A stretch of DNA of 63,842 nucleotides, counting the filler, from Octopus bimaculoides (Eukaryota): NCBI RefSeq assembly GCF_001194135.2. It is 7 parts of 7 records of this genome, joined end to end, with 100 filler letters (N's around TTAATTAATTAA, not from the genome) between each part and the next. Parts side by side here need not be neighbours in the genome. Positions count along the whole stretch, not along the records: positions 34,838 to 42,937 come from NC_068986.1; 6 more parts are not named here. One strand, 5' to 3'. Made by a program: the position numbers and the translations under genes. The notes beneath the pieces were generated by a model. The model saw only the letters and a list, made by a program, of their open reading frames with translations, ran no database searches and had not been told where the DNA came from. The number at the start of each line of letters is the position of its first letter. Position 1 is the first letter of the stretch. Below, in pieces: positions 34,838 through 42,937 of this stretch.

Positions 34838-35305
34838 GTTCCAATCTGATTTGGCATGGTTTCTACCACCAGATACCCATCCTAGTGCCAATCACTCCTG
34901 GCATGTAGTGGGTGCTTTTTACTTGCCAGTTACAAAACACTAGCATTGGCCATGGCTATCATCTCACTGGGCTTGACAGGTCTTCTCAAGCATGGGGTAT
35001 TGCCAAAGGTCTTGGTCACTTGTCACTGCCTCTGTGAGGCCCAAAGTTTGGAGGGTACTTTTCATGTGTTATTGGCACAGGTGCCAGTTTTGTAACATTG
35101 GCATCAGCCACAACAATGATTTCATGTGGCTTGATGTAGAAGGGCTTCCACACAGCTTCCATTAACTATATTCATTCACAAAGCATTGGTCAGCCTGTAG
35201 CTGTAGTAGAAGACACTTGCCTAAGGTGTTGCATAGTGAGACTGAACCGAAAACCACATTGCAAAGCAAGCTTCTTAACCACACAGCTATGCCTGCACCT
35301 ATAGC
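34838..35305 (-). mobile_element. RTE 3'UTR fragment followed by SINE A
   Basis: Similar to 14930-15470 and to the reverse complement of family A. Confidence 0.75.
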
Positions 35306-35861
35306 AACACTGACCTCATATTACATACTCATGTCTTAAAGAAAAAAAATGTACACATTGAATATAAATTTATGTGTGAATAAAAGACAGAATGGTCATA
35401 GCTAGAACAGGAGTCTGTTTGATCAGGAGTGATATGGGAGTTAAACAACAGCAACAGAAGCAGCAATAGTAGTAGCAGCAGCAATGACATCATCATCATC
35501 AGCAGCAATCGACTTATTGACATTTNNNNNNNNNNNNNNNNNNNNNNNNNNNNNNNNNNNNNNNNNNNNNNNNNNNNNNNNNNNNNNNNNNNNNNNNNNN
35601 NNNNNNNNNNNNNNNNNNNNNNNNNNNNNNNNNNNNNNNNNNNNNNNNNNNNNNNNNNNNNNNNNNNNNNNNNNNNNNNNNNNNNNNNNNNNNNNNNNNN
35701 NNNNNNNNNNNNNNNNNNNNNNNNNNTACCAATACTATAACTCAGGTCCTTTTGCTTACCACTTTTTCATCATCTGTTCTTTCCAGAATATCAACCTTCT
35801 AGAATTTCTAGCCACCTACATTTTTCCCTATCAGATACAAAGTTCCATCCTTGTTGTGATG

Positions 35862-38800
35862 TGCTACCTTGTGTGCCACAATGCCCCTGAGAGTTATGTG
35901 GAGCCCTATAGCACACTTACGAGGGTGGCACATCCTGGGCGGCACATTAACCCTAACCCTAACCCTAGCCCTAACCCTAATATTAACCCTAACGCTAGCC
36001 CTAACATTAACCCTAACCCTAACACTAGCCCTCATCCTAACCCTGACCCTTGGCCCCTGACACTTGACCTCTGACCCTTGGCCCCTGACCCTTGGCGCTT
36101 GACCCTTGGTCCAACCCTTAACATTTGATAATTGACCTTTGACACTTGGCCCTTGACCTTTGACCCATGGCACCTGACCTTTGATCATTGGCACCTGACC
36201 TTTGACCCTTGGCCACTGACCTTTGACCCTGACCTTTGACCCCGGACATTTGACCCCTGAACTTTGACCCTCGGCGGCACATATGGTGAGCCCTATGGCA
36301 CAATTACGAGGGTGGCACATGTGGGGAGCCATATGGCACACTTATGAGGGTGGCACATCCTTGGTGGCACATATAGGGAGCCCTATGGCATACTTACGAG
36401 GGTGGCACACTTACAAGGGTGGCACATCCTGGGCGGCACATTAGCCCTAACCCTAACCCTAGCTCTAACATTAACCCTAATCCTAACCCTTGACCCTTGG
36501 CCCTTGACCTTTGATCATTGACCTTTGACACTTGGCTCTTGACCTTTGGCTCTTGGACCCTGACCTTTGACCCTTGGCCCTGACTTTTGACCTTTGACCC
36601 TTGGCCCTGACTTTTGACCTTTGACCCTTGGCGGCACATATGGGGAGACCTATGGCACTATTACGGAGGGAGGCACATACTTGGTGGTACATACTTGGCG
36701 GCACATTAACCCTAACCCTAACATTAATCCTAACCCTAATATTAACCCTAACCCTAGCCCTAATATTAACACAAACTCTAACCGTAACCCTAACCCTAAC
36801 ACCTGACACTTGCCCCTGACCCTTGGCCCTGACCTTTGATGCTTGACCCCTGACCTTTGACCTTTGATCATTGACCTTTGACACTGACCTTTGACCTTTG
36901 TTCCTCGGCGGCACATATGGGGAGCCCTATGACACACTTACGAGGGTGGCACATCCTTGGCGGCACATATAGGGAGCCCTATGGCACACTTACGAGGGTG
37001 GTACATCCTGGGCGGCACATTAACCCTAACCCTAACACTAACCCTATCCCTATCCCTAAACCAAACCCTAACCCTAACCCTAACACCTGACCCATAACCC
37101 TTGACCCTTGGCACCTGACCCTAGGCCCTTGACCTTTGGCTCCTGACCTTTGACCATTTACTCCTGACGATTGACCCTTGACCTCTTACCTTTGACCCCT
37201 GACCCTTGACCTTTGACTCCATGACCTTTGACCCCATGACCTTTGACCCCTGATCTTTGACCCTCGGCGACACATCCTTGGTGGCACATATAGGGAGCCG
37301 TATGGCACACTTACGAGGGTGGCACATCCTGGGCGGCATATTAGCCTAGCCCTAACTCTAACCTTGACCCTTGGCACCTGACCCTTGGCACCTGACCCTT
37401 GGCCCTTGACCTTTGACCCATGGCCCTGACCTTTGACCCATGGCACCTGGCCGTTGACACCTGACCTTTGACCCTTGGTGGCGCATCCTTGGCGGCACAT
37501 ATGGGGAGCCCTATGGCACTATTATGAGGGTGGCACATCTTTGGCGGCACATGTGGGGAGCGCTATGGCACACTTAGGAGGGTGGCACATCCTGGGCGGC
37601 ACATATGGGGAGCCCTATGGCACACTTTCGAGGGTGGCACATACTTGGTGGCACATACTTGGCGTAACATCTTTGGCGGCACACTTACGAGGGTGGAACA
37701 TCCTGGGCGGCACATTAACCCTAACCCTAACTCTAACCCTAGCCCTAACATTAACACAAACTCTAACACTAACCCTAACACCTGACACTTGCCCCTGACC
37801 CTTGGCCCCTGACCCTTGGCGCTTGGCCCTGACCTTTGACGCTTGACCCCTGACCTTTGACCTTTGTTCATTGACCTTTGACCCTGACCTTTGACCTTTG
37901 ATACTCGGCGGCACATCCTAGGCTGCACATATGGGGAGCCGTATGGCACACTTACGAGGGTGGAACATGCTTGGCGTCACATGTGGGGAGCTCTATGGCA
38001 CACTTAGGAGGGTGGCACATCCTGGGCGGCACATATAGGGAGCCCTATGGCACACTTATGAGGGTGGTACATCCTTGGCGGCACATATAGGGAGCGCTAT
38101 GGCACACTTACGAGGGTGGCACATCCTGGGCGGTACATTAGCCCTAACCCTAACATTAACCTTAACCCTAGCTCTAACATTAACCCTAACCCTAACCCTA
38201 ACCCTTGACCCATGGCACCTGACCCTTGACCCTTGGCACCTGACCCTTGACCCTTGGCCCTTGACCTTTGATCATTGACCTTTGATCATTGACCTTTGAC
38301 ACTAGGCCCTAGACCTTTGACCCTTGGCCCCTGACCTTTGACCTTTGACCCTTGGCGGCACATATAGGGAGCCCTATTCCACACTTAGGAGGGTGGCACA
38401 TCCTTGGCGGCACATATGGGGAGTCCTATGGCACACTTACGAGGGCTAACCCTAACATTAACCCTAACCCTAATATTAACCCTAACCCTAACATTAACCC
38501 TAACACTAGCCCTAACCCTAATATTAACCCTAATCCTAGGCCTAACATTAACCCTAACCCTAACACTAACCCTAGCCCTAATCCTAAACCTAGCCCTAAC
38601 CCAGCCCTGAACCCTGACCCTTGACCCTTGGCCCCTGACCCTTGACCCTTGACACTTGACCACTGACCTTTGACACTTGGCCACTGACATTTGACCCTTG
38701 ACCTTTTACCCGTGACGGCACATATGGGGAGCCCTATGGCACACGTAGGAGGGTGGCACATCCTGGGCGGCACATATGGAGAGCCCTATGGCACACTTAC

Positions 38801-39027
38801 GAGTGTGGCACATCCTGGGCTGCACATCATTGGTGGCACATATAGGGAGCCTTATGGCACACTTACGAGGGTGGCACATCCCGGTCGGCACATATGGGGA
38901 GCCCTATGGCACATCCTTGGCGGCAATCCTTGGCGGCACATGCTTGGCGACACAACCTTGGCGGCACATATGGGGAGCCCTATGGCACACTTACGAGGGT
39001 TGCACATCCTTGGCGGCACCTATGGGT
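35862..39027. repeat. Tripartite higher-order satellite: GGCACA block, (CCCTAA)-like block, (TGACCTT/TGACCC) block; ~8 cycles
   Basis: Invariant block order; cycles of ~270-450 bp; ~53-bp subunit ggcggcacatatggggagccctatggcacacttacgagggtggcacatccttg. Confidence 0.95.
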
Positions 39028-39029
39028 AG

Positions 39030-39555
39030 TCCTCAGCCGTCTGGACTACTGCTCTCAGCTGTGGTCACCTTAAAGTACCAAATTAATAGCGGAACTTGAG
39101 GCGGTTCAGTGATGCAAACACAAGGAAGATTGCATGAATGGAACTGAAATACTGGGAGAGACTGAAAGAGCTGCGACTCTACTCTCTGGAGCGAAGATGG
39201 GAGAGGTATGCAGTGATATACGTGTGGAAGATATTAGAGGGGCTGGCACCAAGCTTTGGAATTGAGAGTTATACCAGATCTCGTATTGGACCATCTAAGG
39301 TGTGAACCATTACTGCAACAGCTTGGGATTCAAGGGTTCACAGCTATTTAACGCCTAGCCAAAACATCTGAGGGATCTCTATGGAATAGGAGTAGATATT
39401 ATCAAGAAACAACTTGATCTCTTGCTGTCCAAGATACTAGACAAACCAAGATCCTAGACAAACCAATATCAAGGCAGCAAACTCAAAAGAGGGCAGCAGT
39501 GTCAAATTCCTTCCTTCACCAAAAGCCAGTCACATAGAATCGGCCAATTAAAAAG
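39030..39555 (+). mobile_element. CR1-clade LINE 3' fragment
   Basis: LSRLDYCSQLWSP...YWERLKELRLYSLERRWERYAVIYVWKILEG...YCNSLGFKGSQLFN. Confidence 0.9.
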
Positions 39556-39611
39556 CGATAACACTGGTGGTTCCCCAGCATGGCACAGCCTCAGGACTGA
39601 AACATATAAAA

Positions 39612-39644
<33 letters not shown>

Positions 39645-40608
39645 AACAATATATGAGTACCTTCATCCACATGTGCATATAGATACATAACTGGGTACAT
39701 GACGTGACAAAAGAACATGGACAAAATGATAAACAAGATACAACAAACAAGCAAGCCACATAGAAACATCTCCTTCATCAGCTGCCACCCTTAAAACACC
39801 GACGTTTCGAAGAATAAAGGTAGTACGCATCGTTGAAATGGTTCTTCCCACGAACACAAATTAAATTATTTTCGTGGAGGGAAACCGAAACGGTGAATAA
39901 ACAAACAAGCAAAAAGGCTGTACATTCAGACGTGAAGTGTGTATGTATTGAACGCTGTGAAGCACGAACAGGAGGGGCAAAGAGGTACGTGCAAGCTTGG
40001 GGAGTTCAAGAACGAAAAGAAATAGCAGCCGGACACATGTGACGAAGGCTGTGTGAAGAGAAAGAGTAGCAGAGGGAAAAGAAGGGGAGGAAGTAGAATA
40101 AAAGTGAGCAACGAGAGGTAGAGAGAGAGAGAGATAGTAGTAGTAACGGTGAGAGACGAAGGACGAGTAACAAGAGATAGAGAGAGAAAGAGATAGTAGT
40201 GACAGGTACAGGCGAAGAACAGTAGAGGGAAGAATGAGAGGGGGAGATAGATATAGAGATAAAGAGAGTCGCGTTAGAAAAATAGTTAAANNNNNNNNNN
40301 NNNNNNNNNNNNNNNNNNNNNNNNNNNNNNNNNNNNNNNNNNNNNNNNNNNNNNNNNNNNNNNNNNNNNNNNNNNNNNNNNNNNNNNNNNNNNNNNNNNN
40401 NNNNNNNNNNNNNNNNNNNNNNNNNNNNNNNNNNNNNNNNNNNNNNNNNNNNNNNNNNNNNNNNNNNNNNNNNNNNNNNNNNNNNNNNNNNNNNNNNNNN
40501 NNNNNNNNNNNNNNNNNNNNNNNNNNNNNNNNNNNNNNNNNNNNNNNNNNNNNNNNNNNNNNNNNNNNNNNNNNNNNNNNNNNNNNNNNNNNNNNNNNNN
40601 NNNNNNNN

Positions 40609-40642
<34 letters not shown>

Positions 40643-40656
40643 GTTTTATACATATA

Positions 40657-40687
<31 letters not shown>

Positions 40688-40764
40688 TATTTTATCAGTT
40701 TCAGCTCAAAGTTGTGGCCATGCTGGAGCACTGCTGTTTTGCTACACTCTCATTATTGAGAGCC

Positions 40765-41268
40765 TCCTCTGATATGTCGCCTTTGGTGAATAAGGGAGTT
40801 TGATGTCACTATCCTCATTTGCACCTCCTGCCGCCAGGTAGGTTCATTTGGGTCTCTCGACAGGAAGAGATCCAGTTTTGATTTGAAAACACCTACATCC
40901 ATTGTGTGTAGATGCCCCTAGGCTCTTTGGGAAAATATTAAAAAGCTGTGAGCCCCTGAAACCCAGGCTGTTGCAGTAACTGGTCCTGAAGCGCAACGGC
41001 ATTGCTGGGATCTTTGGCACTGTGCAATGGTGAGCCGTTCTGACATTTGTGTGGCTTTCAAAGCCAACATTTGGCACAATCACTTCCAGGATCTTCCAGA
41101 TGTATATTATTGCATATCTCTCCCGCCTTCGCTCCAGGGAGTAGAGTCTTAGCTGCTTCAGCCTTTCCCAGTAGCTGAGCTGTTGCAATGAGACGATCTT
41201 CTTTGTGAAGTTTTGCTGAATTGCTTCAACAAGGTCCGCTAGAGATGGCAGCCACTCGACCTTGACCT
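40765..41268 (-). mobile_element. CR1-clade LINE 3' fragment
   Basis: QNFTKKI..LSYWERLKQLRLYSLERRRERYAIIYIWKILE...SYCNSLGFRGSQLFNIFPKSL. Confidence 0.92.
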
Positions 41269-42232
41269 TAGCATATACTTTTAAAGCGACACACACACAC
41301 ACATATGTATGTGTTATATATNNNNNNNNNNNNNNNNNNNNNNNNNNNNNNNNNNNNNNNNNNNNNNNNNNNNNNNNNNNNNNNNNNNNNNNNNNNNNNN
41401 NNNNNNNNNNNNNNNNNNNNNNNNNNNNNNNNNNNNNNNNNNNNNNNNNNNNNNNNNNNNNNNNNNNNNNNNNNNNNNNNNNNNNNNNNNNNNNNNNNNN
41501 NNNNNNNNNNNNNNNNNNNNNNNNNNNNNNNNNNNNNNNNNNNNNNNNNNNNNNNNNNNNNNNNNNNNNNNNNNNNNNNNNNNNNNNNNNNNNNNNNNNN
41601 NNNNNNNNNNNNNNNNNNNNNNNNNNNNNNNNNNNNNNNNNNNNNNNNNNNNNNNNNNNNNNNNNNNNNNNNNNNNNNNNNNNNNNNNNNNNNNNNNNNN
41701 NNNNNNNNNNNNNNNNNNNNNNNNNNNNNNNNNNNNNNNNNNNNNNNNNNNNNNNNNNNNNNNNNNNNNNNNNNNNNNNNNNNNNNNNNNNNNNNNNNNN
41801 NNNNNNNNNNNNNNNNNNNNNNNNNNNNNNNNNNNNNNNNNNNNNNNNNNNNNNNNNNNNNNNNNNNNNNNNNNNNNNNNNNNNNNNNNNNNNNNNNNNN
41901 NNNNNNNNNNNNNNNNNNNNNNNNNNNNNNNNNNNNNNNNNNNNNNNNNNNNNNNNNNNNNNNNNNNNNNNNNNNNNNNNNNNNNNNNNNNNNNNNNNNN
42001 NNNNNNNNNNNNNNNNNNNNNNNNNNNNNNNNNNNNNNNNNNNNNNNNNNNNNNNNNNNNNNNNNNNNNNNNNNNNNNNNNNNNNNNNNNNNNNNNNNNN
42101 NNNNNNNNNNNNNNNNNNNNNNNNNNNNNNNNNNNNNNNNNNNNNNNNNNNNNNNNNNNNNNNNNNNNNNNNNNNNNNNNNNNNNNNNNNNNNNNNNNNN
42201 NNNNNNATATATATATATATATATATATATAT

Positions 42233-42894
42233 ACTAGCTGTTTTTTCCGGTTTCACCCGGGTAGTTTGGTTGATGTTGTAAAACCTGCAATTTTCTAAAT
42301 ATTTACCTCCTCTTTGTATTCAAAAATAAAGATTAAATATATATATTTTAAGAAAACAAAAATTAACGAAAAAACAAAAAAGCCCAAATTAATAGAAATG
42401 TTAAGTTGCCGATAGCTGTAGTAACTGGAAGGTTTCAGTACTCTGATATAGCTAAAATTATATTAATTTGTGTAATTAAAGTCTAATGTTGTCATTGTTC
42501 CTAATCTGAACCTCAACCATGAATGAAAAATCAAGTACATAACAGTGAAGTTGTTGTATGTACACAAAGAATCATATAAATTGTACTTTGTTAAACAACT
42601 CGAAGTAAATACAATGTAAAACAGTAGCAGAAACTTTAAACAAATAGAATTAATGTTTAAGTTCACCGATCGAACATGATCGCAGCTGAAGCCTGCCTTG
42701 AAAAACGGGTCAATGGGGAAACAGCAGAACTTTAGGCGACGTAATAATTCTAAAAAAAAGGGAAAGAATAAACGATTGTGCACACATGCAATGAACGGAA
42801 TAAACTGAACTTACGTGGCGTGATTGGTTGCAAAAAATAGCAGCGGAATGTACGTGAAGGAAACATGGAGACGAGAGAGATCATTGCGCGTGCG

Positions 42895-42900
<6 letters not shown>
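42233..42900 (-). mobile_element. Helitron-like non-autonomous element, 3' end at 42233
   Basis: Minus strand ends CCCGGGTGAAACCGG hairpin ... CTAGT. Confidence 0.55.

Positions 42901-42937
<37 letters not shown>

What the first reader, a model, noticed from the sequence alone, without database searches (positions are those of the whole stretch)
35862..39027. Tripartite higher-order satellite containing telomere-like CCCTAA blocks
Seen: about 8 cycles with fixed order (GGCACA block, CCCTAA/CCCTAG/CATTAA block, TGACC block) but variable block lengths, and strong strand asymmetry with the G-rich minus strand offering G4 potential. Short inverted GGCACA motifs mark the left edge (~35855-35887), and a CR1 fragment abuts the right edge. 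Known: TTAGGG is the molluscan telomere repeat. Inference: a subtelomeric or interstitial telomere-derived satellite, or the expanded interior of an unrecognised element.
Basis: partly seen in the sequence, partly recalled or inferred. Interest (0 to 1): 0.7.

Follow-up and report, generated by a model that had tools for sequence, protein, structure and literature searches.

The report
Three-block tandem repeat with telomere-like tracts
A 3.1-kb non-coding stretch of an animal genome repeats a ~350-base unit eight times; each unit has a 52-base minisatellite, a worn telomere-like CCCTAA tract and a 7-base microsatellite, a known kind of repeat whose chromosomal position cannot be settled here.

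Summary
Window 35889-39033 contains eight complete cycles of three blocks in fixed order, followed by a ninth A block.
- A is a 52-bp unit built from 21-, 17- and 14-nt GGCACA-led subunits.
- B is a tract of degenerate TAACCC hexamers, 41 of about 94 canonical, with a longest perfect run of 22 nt.
- C is a strict heptamer, TGACCYT.

Block lengths vary from 18 to 323 bp. Junction phases are conserved. Three linked junction variants split cycles 1-7 into two interleaved subfamilies, so whole cycles were duplicated and the blocks then changed length locally.

A decayed, 5'-truncated LINE reverse-transcriptase fragment abuts the right edge. A weak 21-nt inverted A-like motif sits at the left edge.

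Strand asymmetry is block-specific. G4 potential is modest, with 5 canonical motifs.

I found no coding signal, Rfam match, transposon termini or target-site duplication, and no second copy in any accessible collection. The source organism was not identified.

Best reading: a composite higher-order tandem repeat carrying interstitial or subtelomeric-type telomere-like tracts, amplified by unequal exchange and slippage. Whether it is subtelomeric, interstitial or inside a transposon remains open. It is a known kind of repeat and an apparently undescribed sequence family. Interest is low to moderate.

The parts
35858..35878 (-). Short inverted partial A unit (TGGCACAC..AAGGTAGCACATC when read on the minus strand), about 10 nt left of the array start
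   Evidence: Local alignment score is 19, and 17 of 1000 shuffles of the flank do as well. It contains one exact TGTGCC.
35889..39033 (+). The whole composite array: 8 A-B-C cycles plus a terminal A block. The C-rich telomere strand is on the plus strand.
35889..36269 (+). Cycle 1 (subfamily alpha): A 35889-35946, B 35947-36041, C 36042-36269
   Evidence: Markers: TTAACC / CC-TGAC / CTCGG.
36270..36626 (+). Cycle 2 (beta): A 36270-36445, B 36446-36487, C 36488-36626
   Evidence: Markers: TTAGCC / CCT-TGAC / CTTGG. A perfect 27-bp x 2.7 tandem lies at 36561-36632.
36627..36902 (+). Cycle 3 (alpha): A 36627-36705, B 36706-36800, C 36801-36902
   Evidence: It shares TAACACAAACTC and ACC-TGACACTTGCCCC with cycle 6.
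36903..37262 (+). Cycle 4 (alpha): A 36903-37019, B 37020-37084, C 37085-37262
37263..37473 (+). Cycle 5 (beta): A 37263-37344, B 37345-37362 (only 3 hexamers), C 37363-37473
37474..37902 (+). Cycle 6 (alpha): A 37474-37714, B 37715-37779, C 37780-37902
37903..38350 (+). Cycle 7 (beta): A 37903-38142, B 38143-38202, C 38203-38350
   Evidence: It holds the longest perfect CCCTAA run, 38184-38205 (22 nt).
38351..38710 (+). Cycle 8 (odd one out): A 38351-38445, B 38446-38600 (the longest B), C 38601-38710. The A-to-B junction lacks about 27 nt.
38711..39033 (+). Terminal A block: (b-c-a) units plus a run of 14-mers. Its last unit overlaps the LINE junction by up to about 10 nt.
39025..39642 (+). 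5'-truncated, frameshifted LINE (CR1-like) reverse-transcriptase C-terminal fragment and 3' region, ending in (AT)n. It bounds the array and is not part of the repeat.

Best explanation
This is a non-coding composite (higher-order) tandem repeat. One ancestral unit of about 350 bp joined three simple repeats. Read on the G-rich minus strand from 5' to 3', these are a 52-bp minisatellite (A), a heptamer microsatellite ARGGTCA (C), and a tract of TTAGGG-like hexamers (B). That unit was amplified head to tail as a whole, by unequal sister-chromatid or homologue exchange or by break-induced copying. This gave two unit subfamilies that now interleave. Afterwards each block expanded and contracted on its own by replication slippage and small internal duplications. 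The telomere-like tracts are old and degenerate, so they are not a working telomere. In class the locus is an interstitial or subtelomeric-type telomere-like sequence embedded in a minisatellite array. A LINE element later inserted, or was joined, at its right edge. Any activity is secondary to the sequence itself: possible binding of telomere-repeat proteins at B, nuclear-receptor-type half-sites at C, and a few G4 sites. No such activity is shown here.

Shown: the anatomy, the whole-unit duplication, the local slippage and the absence of coding signal. Inferred: the amplification mechanism, the telomeric origin of B and C, and neutrality.
For: - **Fixed order and block-exclusive motifs**.
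- **Clean unit parsing.** B has 81 hexamer units, 41 of them TAACCC. C has 121 of 149 units exactly 7 nt long, led by TGACCTT (36) and TGACCCT (27). A parses as (b21-c17-a14)n in constant phase.
- **Conserved junction phase.** The A-to-B junction is GGCGGCACA|TTAACCC in 7 of 8 cycles. The C-to-A junction is TTTGACC|CTYGGCGGCACAT.
- **Whole-cycle copying.** Three junction markers 100-300 nt apart co-vary perfectly in cycles 1-7. Alpha cycles {1,3,4,6} carry TTAACC / CC-TGAC / CTCGG. Beta cycles {2,5,7} carry TTAGCC / CT-TGAC / CTTGG. Only copying of whole cycles explains this. Cycles 3 and 6 also share private variants.
- **Recent local slippage.** There is a perfect 27-bp x 2.7 tandem and a perfect 14-bp x 2.1 tandem.
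- **Degenerate telomere tracts.** The longest perfect run is 22 nt.
- **No coding or RNA signal.** ORF peptides from both strands find nothing among 5.8 billion proteins. No Rfam match reaches its threshold and there is no tRNA.
- **No transposon termini, TIR or TSD**.
- **Assembly is probably sound.** No 50-mer occurs twice in the array, so ordinary reads can resolve the assembled order.
- **The kind is documented.** Degenerate TTAGGG-like blocks in subtelomeres, ITS flanked by satellites and transposons, and their growth by unequal crossing-over, conversion and slippage are all described (PMC6410037, read).
Against: - Only one copy is available, so a dispersed transposon-borne origin cannot be excluded.
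- The organism and its telomere motif were not identified.
- The A unit has no detectable relation to telomeric sequence.
- The scaffold is a gapped short-read assembly (three N runs), so cycle number and block lengths could be somewhat wrong.
- The array ends exactly at a LINE 5' junction and does not resume after the LINE. A simple insertion into the middle of an array does not explain that.
Confidence: 0.6

Rival explanations
1. The array is the expanded internal tandem-repeat region of an unrecognised mobile element, for example a Helitron-like or MITE-like non-autonomous element of the sort that carries central satellite arrays in bivalves. Under this reading it is dispersed in many copies with shared termini.
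For: - The neighbourhood is rich in transposons: two LINE fragments lie within 2.3 kb.
- A short inverted A-like motif sits at the left edge.
- ITS are often flanked by, or moved by, mobile elements (PMC6410037).
Against: - The left and right flanks share no similarity, TIR or TSD. The best shared word is a 7-mer, which is at chance level.
- The right neighbour is a mid-ORF truncated LINE, so the array does not sit at a normal LINE position.
- The A unit is unrelated to the LINE relatives.
- No second copy turned up in any collection. Those collections evidently lack the source species, so this last point is weak.
Confidence: 0.15
2. The cycles are fossil chromosome ends. Each [A-C-B] unit on the G strand is a former subtelomere, then variant repeats, then a telomere tract. 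Units were stacked by recombination-based telomere copying (BIR or ALT-like), as with yeast Y' elements separated by internal telomere tracts. The locus is truly subtelomeric, with the chromosome end to the left.
For: - All B tracts share one orientation.
- On the G strand the order is minisatellite, then heptamer, then TTAGGG-like tract. The only abrupt junction lies distal to the telomere-like tract.
- The B-to-C transition is in phase and differs by one substitution plus one insertion.
- Human telomeres carry variant repeats in their proximal part (PMC3518223).
Against: - Only two cyclic orders are possible, so the polarity argument is worth a factor of about two.
- The A-to-B junction is the same in 7 of 8 cycles, so it formed once and was copied. 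Ordinary unequal exchange explains that just as well.
- Non-telomeric sequence lies to the left for at least 1 kb.
- The tracts are strongly degenerate.
Confidence: 0.12
3. The array is an assembly artefact: a chimeric or mis-ordered join of reads from several simple-repeat loci in a gapped short-read scaffold.
For: - The piece has three N gaps bordered by microsatellites.
- Internal telomere-motif blocks in contigs are either ITS or misassemblies (PMC9498494).
Against: - The same three junction types recur 7-8 times each, with linked variants.
- No 50-mer is repeated and the longest exact repeat is 45 nt.
- There are no Ns inside the array.
- Random mis-joins would not produce a strict cyclic order.
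Confidence: 0.06
4. The array plus LINE is a chimeric retrocopy. The LINE reverse transcriptase switched template from LINE RNA to a transcript of an array like this one, as in U6-L1 chimeras. Alternatively, the cycles are stacked copies of a short non-autonomous retroelement that targets telomeres and ends in CCCTAA.
For: - The junction between the last A unit and the LINE overlaps by up to about 10 nt of possible microhomology.
- The array stops exactly at the LINE 5' truncation point and does not resume after the LINE tail.
Against: - No target-site duplication brackets the array plus LINE.
- Variable block lengths and alpha/beta interleaving fit satellite dynamics better than repeated insertions.
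- No other copy supports a mobile family.
Confidence: 0.04

Closest known systems
Subtelomeric-type and satellite-associated interstitial telomeric sequences (ITS), as classified in Aksenova & Mirkin 2019 (PMC6410037)
   Same: [quoted passage not shown] It is length-variable, and its growth fits unequal crossing-over, conversion and slippage.
   Different: Here the telomere-like tract is one of three fixed modules of a unit that is itself tandemly repeated. Chromosomal position is unknown, and at 3.1 kb it is far smaller than heterochromatic ITS blocks.
Tandem yeast Y' elements separated by internal TG1-3 tracts (from my own knowledge)
   Same: Subtelomeric units are repeated head to tail. Short telomere tracts of the same orientation sit between them. 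Amplification is by recombination or BIR.
   Different: Y' is 5-7 kb and encodes a helicase. This unit is about 350 bp, non-coding and made only of simple repeats. A terminal location is not shown.
Variant-repeat zone of human proximal telomeres, and TCAGGG repeats that recruit NR2C/F orphan nuclear receptors in ALT cells (PMC3518223)
   Same: Telomere-like repeats grade into a variant repeat whose G strand carries GGTCA nuclear-receptor half-sites. The C blocks give 88 RGGTCA half-sites and 30 DR1 arrangements, all on the G strand.
   Different: The variant here is a heptamer (ARGGTCA, giving DR1 spacing), not the hexamer TCAGGG. No binding data exist, and the organism differs and is unidentified.
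Higher-order repeat (HOR) satellites such as primate alpha satellite (PMC4131833, seen only as a title and abstract in the search listing)
   Same: Units fall into subfamilies defined by linked diagnostic variants and are arranged in a quasi-alternating pattern. This implies amplification of multi-unit blocks.
   Different: The monomers here are composites of three unrelated simple repeats with elastic lengths, not a fixed monomer of about 170 bp. Array size and genome abundance are unknown.
Human subtelomeric 61-29-37 bp repeat block upstream of TTAGGG, and Plasmodium TARE1-6 (both from my own knowledge)
   Same: Several different tandem-repeat blocks lie in a fixed order next to telomere repeats.
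   Different: Those occur once per chromosome end and are not cycled. The human block is a CpG island, whereas A has a CpG observed/expected ratio of only 0.50.

Membership tests
Interstitial / subtelomeric-type telomeric sequence (ITS) | Tracts of telomere-motif repeats (TTAGGG/CCCTAA and close variants) | tested here: met
   81 hexamer units in 8 tracts. 41 are TAACCC; the rest differ by one or two substitutions (TAACAT 9, TAGCCC 8, TAATAT 5, TAACAC 5, TAATCC 4).
Interstitial / subtelomeric-type telomeric sequence (ITS) | Not at the physical end: non-telomeric DNA on both sides | tested here: met
   There are 851 called bases plus a gap on the left and 3.9 kb on the right, with no array 12-mer in either. 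This is valid only for the scaffold as assembled.
Interstitial / subtelomeric-type telomeric sequence (ITS) | The motif equals the host's own telomere repeat | not tested
   The organism was not identified. TTAGGG is the ancestral metazoan motif and is reported for Mollusca (PMC6410037).
Interstitial / subtelomeric-type telomeric sequence (ITS) | Subtelomeric position (for the subtelomeric subclass) | not testable with these tools
   No chromosome-scale context is available. The source genome is absent from every collection searched.
Higher-order-repeat satellite DNA | Head-to-tail tandem repetition of a composite unit | tested here: met
   8 cycles plus a partial one, in constant order and junction phase.
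Higher-order-repeat satellite DNA | Unit subfamilies with linked diagnostic variants, showing amplification above the single-unit level | tested here: met
   Three junction markers co-vary perfectly. Alpha is {1,3,4,6} and beta is {2,5,7}, in the order a b a a b a b.
Higher-order-repeat satellite DNA | High genomic abundance or long arrays (satellite in the strict sense) | not testable with these tools
   Only this 3.1-kb array is visible, and no other copy was found.
Transposon-internal tandem array | Bounded by element termini (TIR, hairpin or conserved ends) and a target-site duplication | tested here: not met
   no flank-to-flank similarity, and the best shared word is a chance-level 7-mer. 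The only hint is a weak 21-nt inverted A-like motif on the left.
Transposon-internal tandem array | Multiple dispersed copies with the same flanks | tested here: inconclusive
   No copy was found anywhere. The collections appear not to hold the source species, since the best LINE relative is only 63-68% identical.
Part of the adjacent CR1-like LINE | The array lies in a UTR of a full element, or shares sequence with the element | tested here: not met
   LINE homology begins in the middle of the RT C-terminal region, at ..VLSRLDYCSQLWSP. The A unit matches the LINE relatives L001 and L002 no better than shuffles do.
G-quadruplex-forming repeat | Four or more G3+ runs with loops of 1-7 nt | tested here: met
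   5 motifs on the minus strand, 0 on the plus strand, shuffle mean 0.31. They are sparse for 3.1 kb, and actual folding was not tested.
Nuclear-receptor DR1 response-element array | RGGTCA n1 RGGTCA direct repeats | tested here: met
   88 half-sites and 30 DR1 sites on the minus strand, 0 on the plus strand, shuffle mean 0.00. This follows from the heptamer period. Protein binding cannot be tested here.

The most novel reading that the evidence does not exclude
The cycles are stacked fossil chromosome ends, produced by recombination-based (ALT/BIR-like) telomere copying in an animal with TTAGGG telomeres. The heptamer block would be a lineage-specific telomere variant repeat whose G strand is a continuous array of DR1 nuclear-receptor sites. 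It would recruit NR2C/F-type orphan receptors, much as TCAGGG repeats do at human ALT telomeres.
Probability: 0.08. Interest if true: 0.6.

Novelty: new member of a known kind. Interest (0 to 1): 0.27.

Why it matters
As it stands, this is a tidy example of how composite satellites are built. Three unrelated simple repeats became locked into one unit. That unit was amplified as a whole, and each block then breathed independently. The linked junction variants record the history.

It would matter more if genome-wide mapping placed such arrays at chromosome ends. That would describe the subtelomere architecture of a poorly studied animal lineage and point to recombination-based end maintenance. 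The same would hold if the heptamer block bound nuclear receptors. Neither can be judged from one 3-kb copy in a gapped scaffold.

Tried and rejected
1. **Looking for other copies.**
 - An exact 22-mer of the A unit is absent from the metagenome, viral and prokaryote-genome collections.
 - A 17-mer gave 23 metagenome hits. All are single chance matches, with flank identity at random level.
 - A combined B..C..C pattern found nothing in viral contigs.
 - A-block ORF peptides from both strands found no protein.
 - Ten window ORFs are not in the 15-billion-protein collection, so the source contig could not be fetched.
2. **Organism identification through the LINE fragment.** It returned only anonymous short contigs at 63-68% identity.
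3. **Literature.** No paper contains the A-unit sequence. I found no description of this array in mollusc or cephalopod repeat papers.
4. **A unit derived from the LINE or from the B/C motifs.** Alignments score no better than shuffles.
5. **A-unit hairpin.** Despite the ATAGGG..CCCTAT palindrome, folding is no better than shuffles, z = +0.7.
6. **TERRA-like CpG-island promoter.** The CpG observed/expected ratio in A is 0.50, so it is not an island.
7. **C as the hexamer TCAGGG variant.** I rejected this. The 22 CCCTGA strings straddle heptamer boundaries, and 121 of 149 units are 7 nt long.
8. **TSD or TIR around the array, or around array plus LINE.** None found.
9. **Rfam.** Only sub-threshold microRNA-model hits on microsatellites, plus one at E = 0.7 inside an A block. 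There are no tRNAs.
10. **Automatic HMM segmentation.** It fragmented the blocks, so I set boundaries from the conserved junctions.
Full report
**What is in the piece**

The piece 34838-42937 is part of a gapped short-read scaffold. It has three N runs: 35526-35726, 40291-40608 and 41322-42206. The gaps are bordered by microsatellites. The finding lies in an uninterrupted stretch between the first two gaps.

**Checking the observation**

Reading the sequence, labelling simple motifs and fixing boundaries from the conserved junctions gives eight complete A-B-C cycles, followed by a ninth A block at 38711-39033.

| Cycle | Start | Length (bp) |
|---|---|---|
| 1 | 35889 | 381 |
| 2 | 36270 | 357 |
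| 3 | 36627 | 276 |
| 4 | 36903 | 360 |
| 5 | 37263 | 211 |
| 6 | 37474 | 429 |
| 7 | 37903 | 448 |
| 8 | 38351 | 360 |

- All 24 block transitions follow the same cyclic order. My own arithmetic puts a random order at about 2^-23.
- The motifs are block-exclusive. CCCTAA occurs 47 times in B and never in A or C. CCTTTGA, CCCTTGA and CCCTTGG occur 36, 16 and 19 times, only in C.
- No 12-mer of the array occurs elsewhere in the piece on either strand.
- Tandem Repeats Finder sees periods of 6, 7, 14, 21, 27 and 52 inside the blocks. It does not see the ~350-bp cycle, because block lengths vary.

**Anatomy of the blocks**

- **B** splits cleanly before TAA/TAG into 81 hexamers. Of these, 41 are canonical TAACCC. 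The rest are recurrent one- or two-substitution variants: TAACAT 9, TAGCCC 8, TAATAT 5, TAACAC 5, TAATCC 4. The longest perfect CCCTAA run is 22 nt. The variants recur in 18-30-nt sub-periods. The tracts are therefore old and have grown by internal duplication, not by fresh telomerase synthesis.
- **C** splits before TGA/TGG into 149 units, of which 121 are exactly 7 nt. The commonest are TGACCTT (36), TGACCCT (27) and TGGCACC (8). C is a heptamer repeat, not a hexamer telomere variant. The 22 CCCTGA strings I first counted straddle heptamer boundaries. C blocks also have internal polarity: TGACCCT/TGGCCCC types lie next to B, and TGACCTT types lie next to A.
- **A** parses as (b-c-a)n, with b = CACATATRGGGAGCCCTATGG (21 nt), c = CACACTTACGAGGGTGG (17 nt) and a = CACATCCTKGGCGG (14 nt). 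This is the 52-bp unit that TRF reports. There are occasional runs of extra 14-mers.

| Block | GC | GC skew | CpG observed/expected |
|---|---|---|---|
| A | 0.58 | +0.13 | 0.50 |
| B | 0.42 | -0.88 | 0.34 |
| C | 0.54 | -0.35 | 0.08 |

**Evidence that whole cycles were copied**

The junctions keep their phase:
- A to B is GGCGGCACA|TTAACCCTAACCC in seven cycles. Cycle 8 lacks about 27 nt there.
- B to C is ..CCCTAAC|(A)CC(T)TGACCC.
- C to A is TTTGACC|CTYGGCGGCACAT.

Three junction markers, 100-300 nt apart, co-vary perfectly in cycles 1-7:
- Cycles 1, 3, 4 and 6 carry TTAACC, ..CC-TGAC and CTCGG.
- Cycles 2, 5 and 7 carry TTAGCC, ..CT-TGAC and CTTGG.

The order is alpha-beta-alpha-alpha-beta-alpha-beta, followed by the atypical cycle 8. 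Cycles 3 and 6 also share private variants (TAACACAAACTC and ACC-TGACACTTGCCCC). Cycles 2 and 7 are the closest pair in B, at 0.98 identity.

This linkage cannot arise if the blocks formed independently. The unit of amplification was the complete cycle, or a dimer of cycles. That is the signature of a higher-order repeat. Perfect local tandems (27 bp x 2.7 at 36561-36632, and 14 bp x 2.1 at 37633-37662), together with the 18-323-bp spread of block lengths, show continuing slippage inside blocks.

**The edges**

- **Left.** Read on the minus strand, 35858-35878 aligns to the A unit (TGGCACAC-----AAGGTAGCACATC). The score is 19, and 17 of 1000 shuffles of the 162-nt flank reach it. The inverted motif is real but weak.
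- **Right.** tblastn with the relatives found shows a reverse-transcriptase C-terminal fragment on the plus strand from about 39025 (..VVLSRLDYCSQLWSP.. ELEAVQ.. YWERLKELRLYSLERRWERYAVIYVWKILEGL..). It needs at least two frame changes and contains stops. It runs to an (AT)n tail at 39614-39642.
- **Second LINE copy.** Another copy lies on the minus strand at 40647-41320 and runs into a gap.
- **LINE identity.** One relative (P0025) sits directly downstream of two RVT_1 ORFs on a 1.4-Mb contig. The fragment is therefore the 3' part of a LINE ORF2. Assigning it to the CR1 clade rests on my memory of the motifs.
- **The junction itself.** The last A unit (GGCGGCACCTATGGGTAGTCCT against the consensus GGCGGCACATATGGGGAGCCCT) overlaps the first LINE codons by up to about 10 nt. 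This is compatible with a microhomology join at a 5'-truncated LINE insertion.
- **Beyond the LINE.** The array does not resume after the LINE tail. No target-site duplication brackets the array or the array plus LINE; the best shared word is a chance-level 7-mer. The left and right flanks share nothing else.

**What it is not**

- ORFs are open on both strands only because the repeats lack stop codons. A 264-aa query made from A-block ORFs of both strands found no protein among 5.8 billion clusters.
- Rfam gave only sub-threshold microRNA-model hits on microsatellites, plus one at E = 0.7 in an A block. There are no tRNAs.
- The A unit folds no better than shuffles.
- The A unit is not detectably related to the LINE relatives or to the B or C consensus.
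- A is not a CpG island.

**Secondary sequence properties**

- Canonical G4 motifs number 5 on the minus strand and 0 on the plus strand, against a shuffle mean of 0.31. The G4 potential is real but modest.
- Because the C period is 7 and the unit is TGACCY+T, the minus strand carries 88 RGGTCA half-sites and 30 DR1 arrangements. The plus strand has none, and shuffles give none.
- In human ALT telomeres the TCAGGG variant repeat creates high-affinity sites for COUP-TF2 and TR4. Variant repeats normally occupy the proximal telomere (PMC3518223).
- I treat this resemblance as a lead only. The repeat here is a heptamer and no binding data exist.

**Context outside the window**

- An exact 22-mer of the A unit is absent from the metagenome, viral and prokaryote-genome collections.
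- The 23 metagenome hits to a 17-mer are chance singletons.
- Ten window ORFs are not in the 15-billion-protein collection.
- The best LINE relatives are only 63-68% identical and anonymous.
- The source species is evidently not in the accessible data. Copy number, dispersal and distance to a chromosome end therefore cannot be tested.
- No paper in the library contains the A-unit sequence, and the repeat literature I retrieved does not describe this array.

**Reliability of the assembly**

- No 50-mer occurs twice in the array, and the longest exact repeat is a 45-nt local tandem.
- Reads of ordinary length can therefore order the cycles. The recurrent junctions with linked variants also argue against a chimeric join.
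- Block lengths and cycle number still need long-read confirmation.
- The review PMC9498494 notes that internal telomere-motif blocks in contigs are either ITS or misassemblies.

**Interpretation**

The best-supported reading is a non-coding composite higher-order tandem repeat that contains degenerate, uniformly oriented telomere-like tracts. In class it is an interstitial or subtelomeric-type ITS embedded in a minisatellite array. It was amplified as whole units by unequal exchange or break-induced copying, and was then remodelled by slippage. This matches what is documented for ITS: degenerate subtelomeric blocks, flanking satellites and transposons, and growth by unequal crossing-over, conversion and slippage (PMC6410037).

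On the G strand the order is A, then heptamer, then TTAGGG-like tract, and the only abrupt junction lies distal to the telomere-like tract. The first C unit is in phase with the last B unit and differs from it by one substitution and one inserted T. This fits units that began as a chromosome end and were stacked like yeast Y' elements. But only two cyclic orders are possible, and the A-to-B junction was clearly formed once and then copied, so the support is weak. If the locus is subtelomeric, the chromosome end lies to the left.

**Verdict**

The telomere-like tracts and the higher-order structure are real.
- The telomeric origin of the A block is not shown.
- The G4 emphasis was overstated.
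- The position (subtelomeric, interstitial or transposon-internal) is undecidable here.
- This is a new member of a known kind, of low to moderate interest.

Noticed in passing
window 39025-39642 (+) and 40647-41320 (-): Two decayed LINE reverse-transcriptase C-terminal fragments lie in opposite orientation. Each ends in an (AT)n tail, which suggests a LINE family with an AT-dinucleotide 3' tail. The plus copy has frameshifts and stops. The minus copy runs into an N gap.
   Followed up: partly
window 40609-40687, 41289-41303, 42207-42233, 42895-42937: (AC)n and (AT)n microsatellites directly border two of the three N gaps and the end of the piece. This is the usual signature of short-read assembly breaks. 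Weak Rfam mir-297, mir-1277 and mir-3149 hits there are microsatellite artefacts far below their gathering scores.
   Followed up: yes
window 36042-38710, C blocks, minus strand: The heptamer TGACCYT makes the G strand a continuous array of nuclear-receptor half-sites: 88 RGGTCA and 30 DR1, with none on the other strand. This is reminiscent of TCAGGG variant repeats that recruit COUP-TF2 and TR4 at human ALT telomeres.
   Followed up: partly
window 39940-40290: A purine-rich (AG-rich) stretch with GC skew of +0.58 to +0.79 and AT skew up to +0.55 runs into the second gap. It contains short (AG)n and AGAGAAAGAG repeats.
   Followed up: no
window 35440-35510: A CAG/CAA/CAT trinucleotide-rich stretch lies just before the first gap. 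TRF reports period 12 with 2.8 copies. It produces low-complexity ORFs on both strands.
   Followed up: no
protein P0004: A 94-aa protein labelled 'hypothetical protein, partial [Escherichia coli]' on a 563-nt contig is 66% identical to the animal LINE fragment. It is probably animal DNA contaminating a bacterial assembly.
   Followed up: no
window 38351-38600 (cycle 8): Cycle 8 departs from both subfamilies. Its A-to-B junction lacks about 27 nt (..ACGAGGG|CTAACCC). It has the longest B tract (155 bp, with a 24-30-nt sub-period) and unique B-to-C and C-to-A junctions. It may be a third unit type or the product of a local rearrangement.
   Followed up: partly
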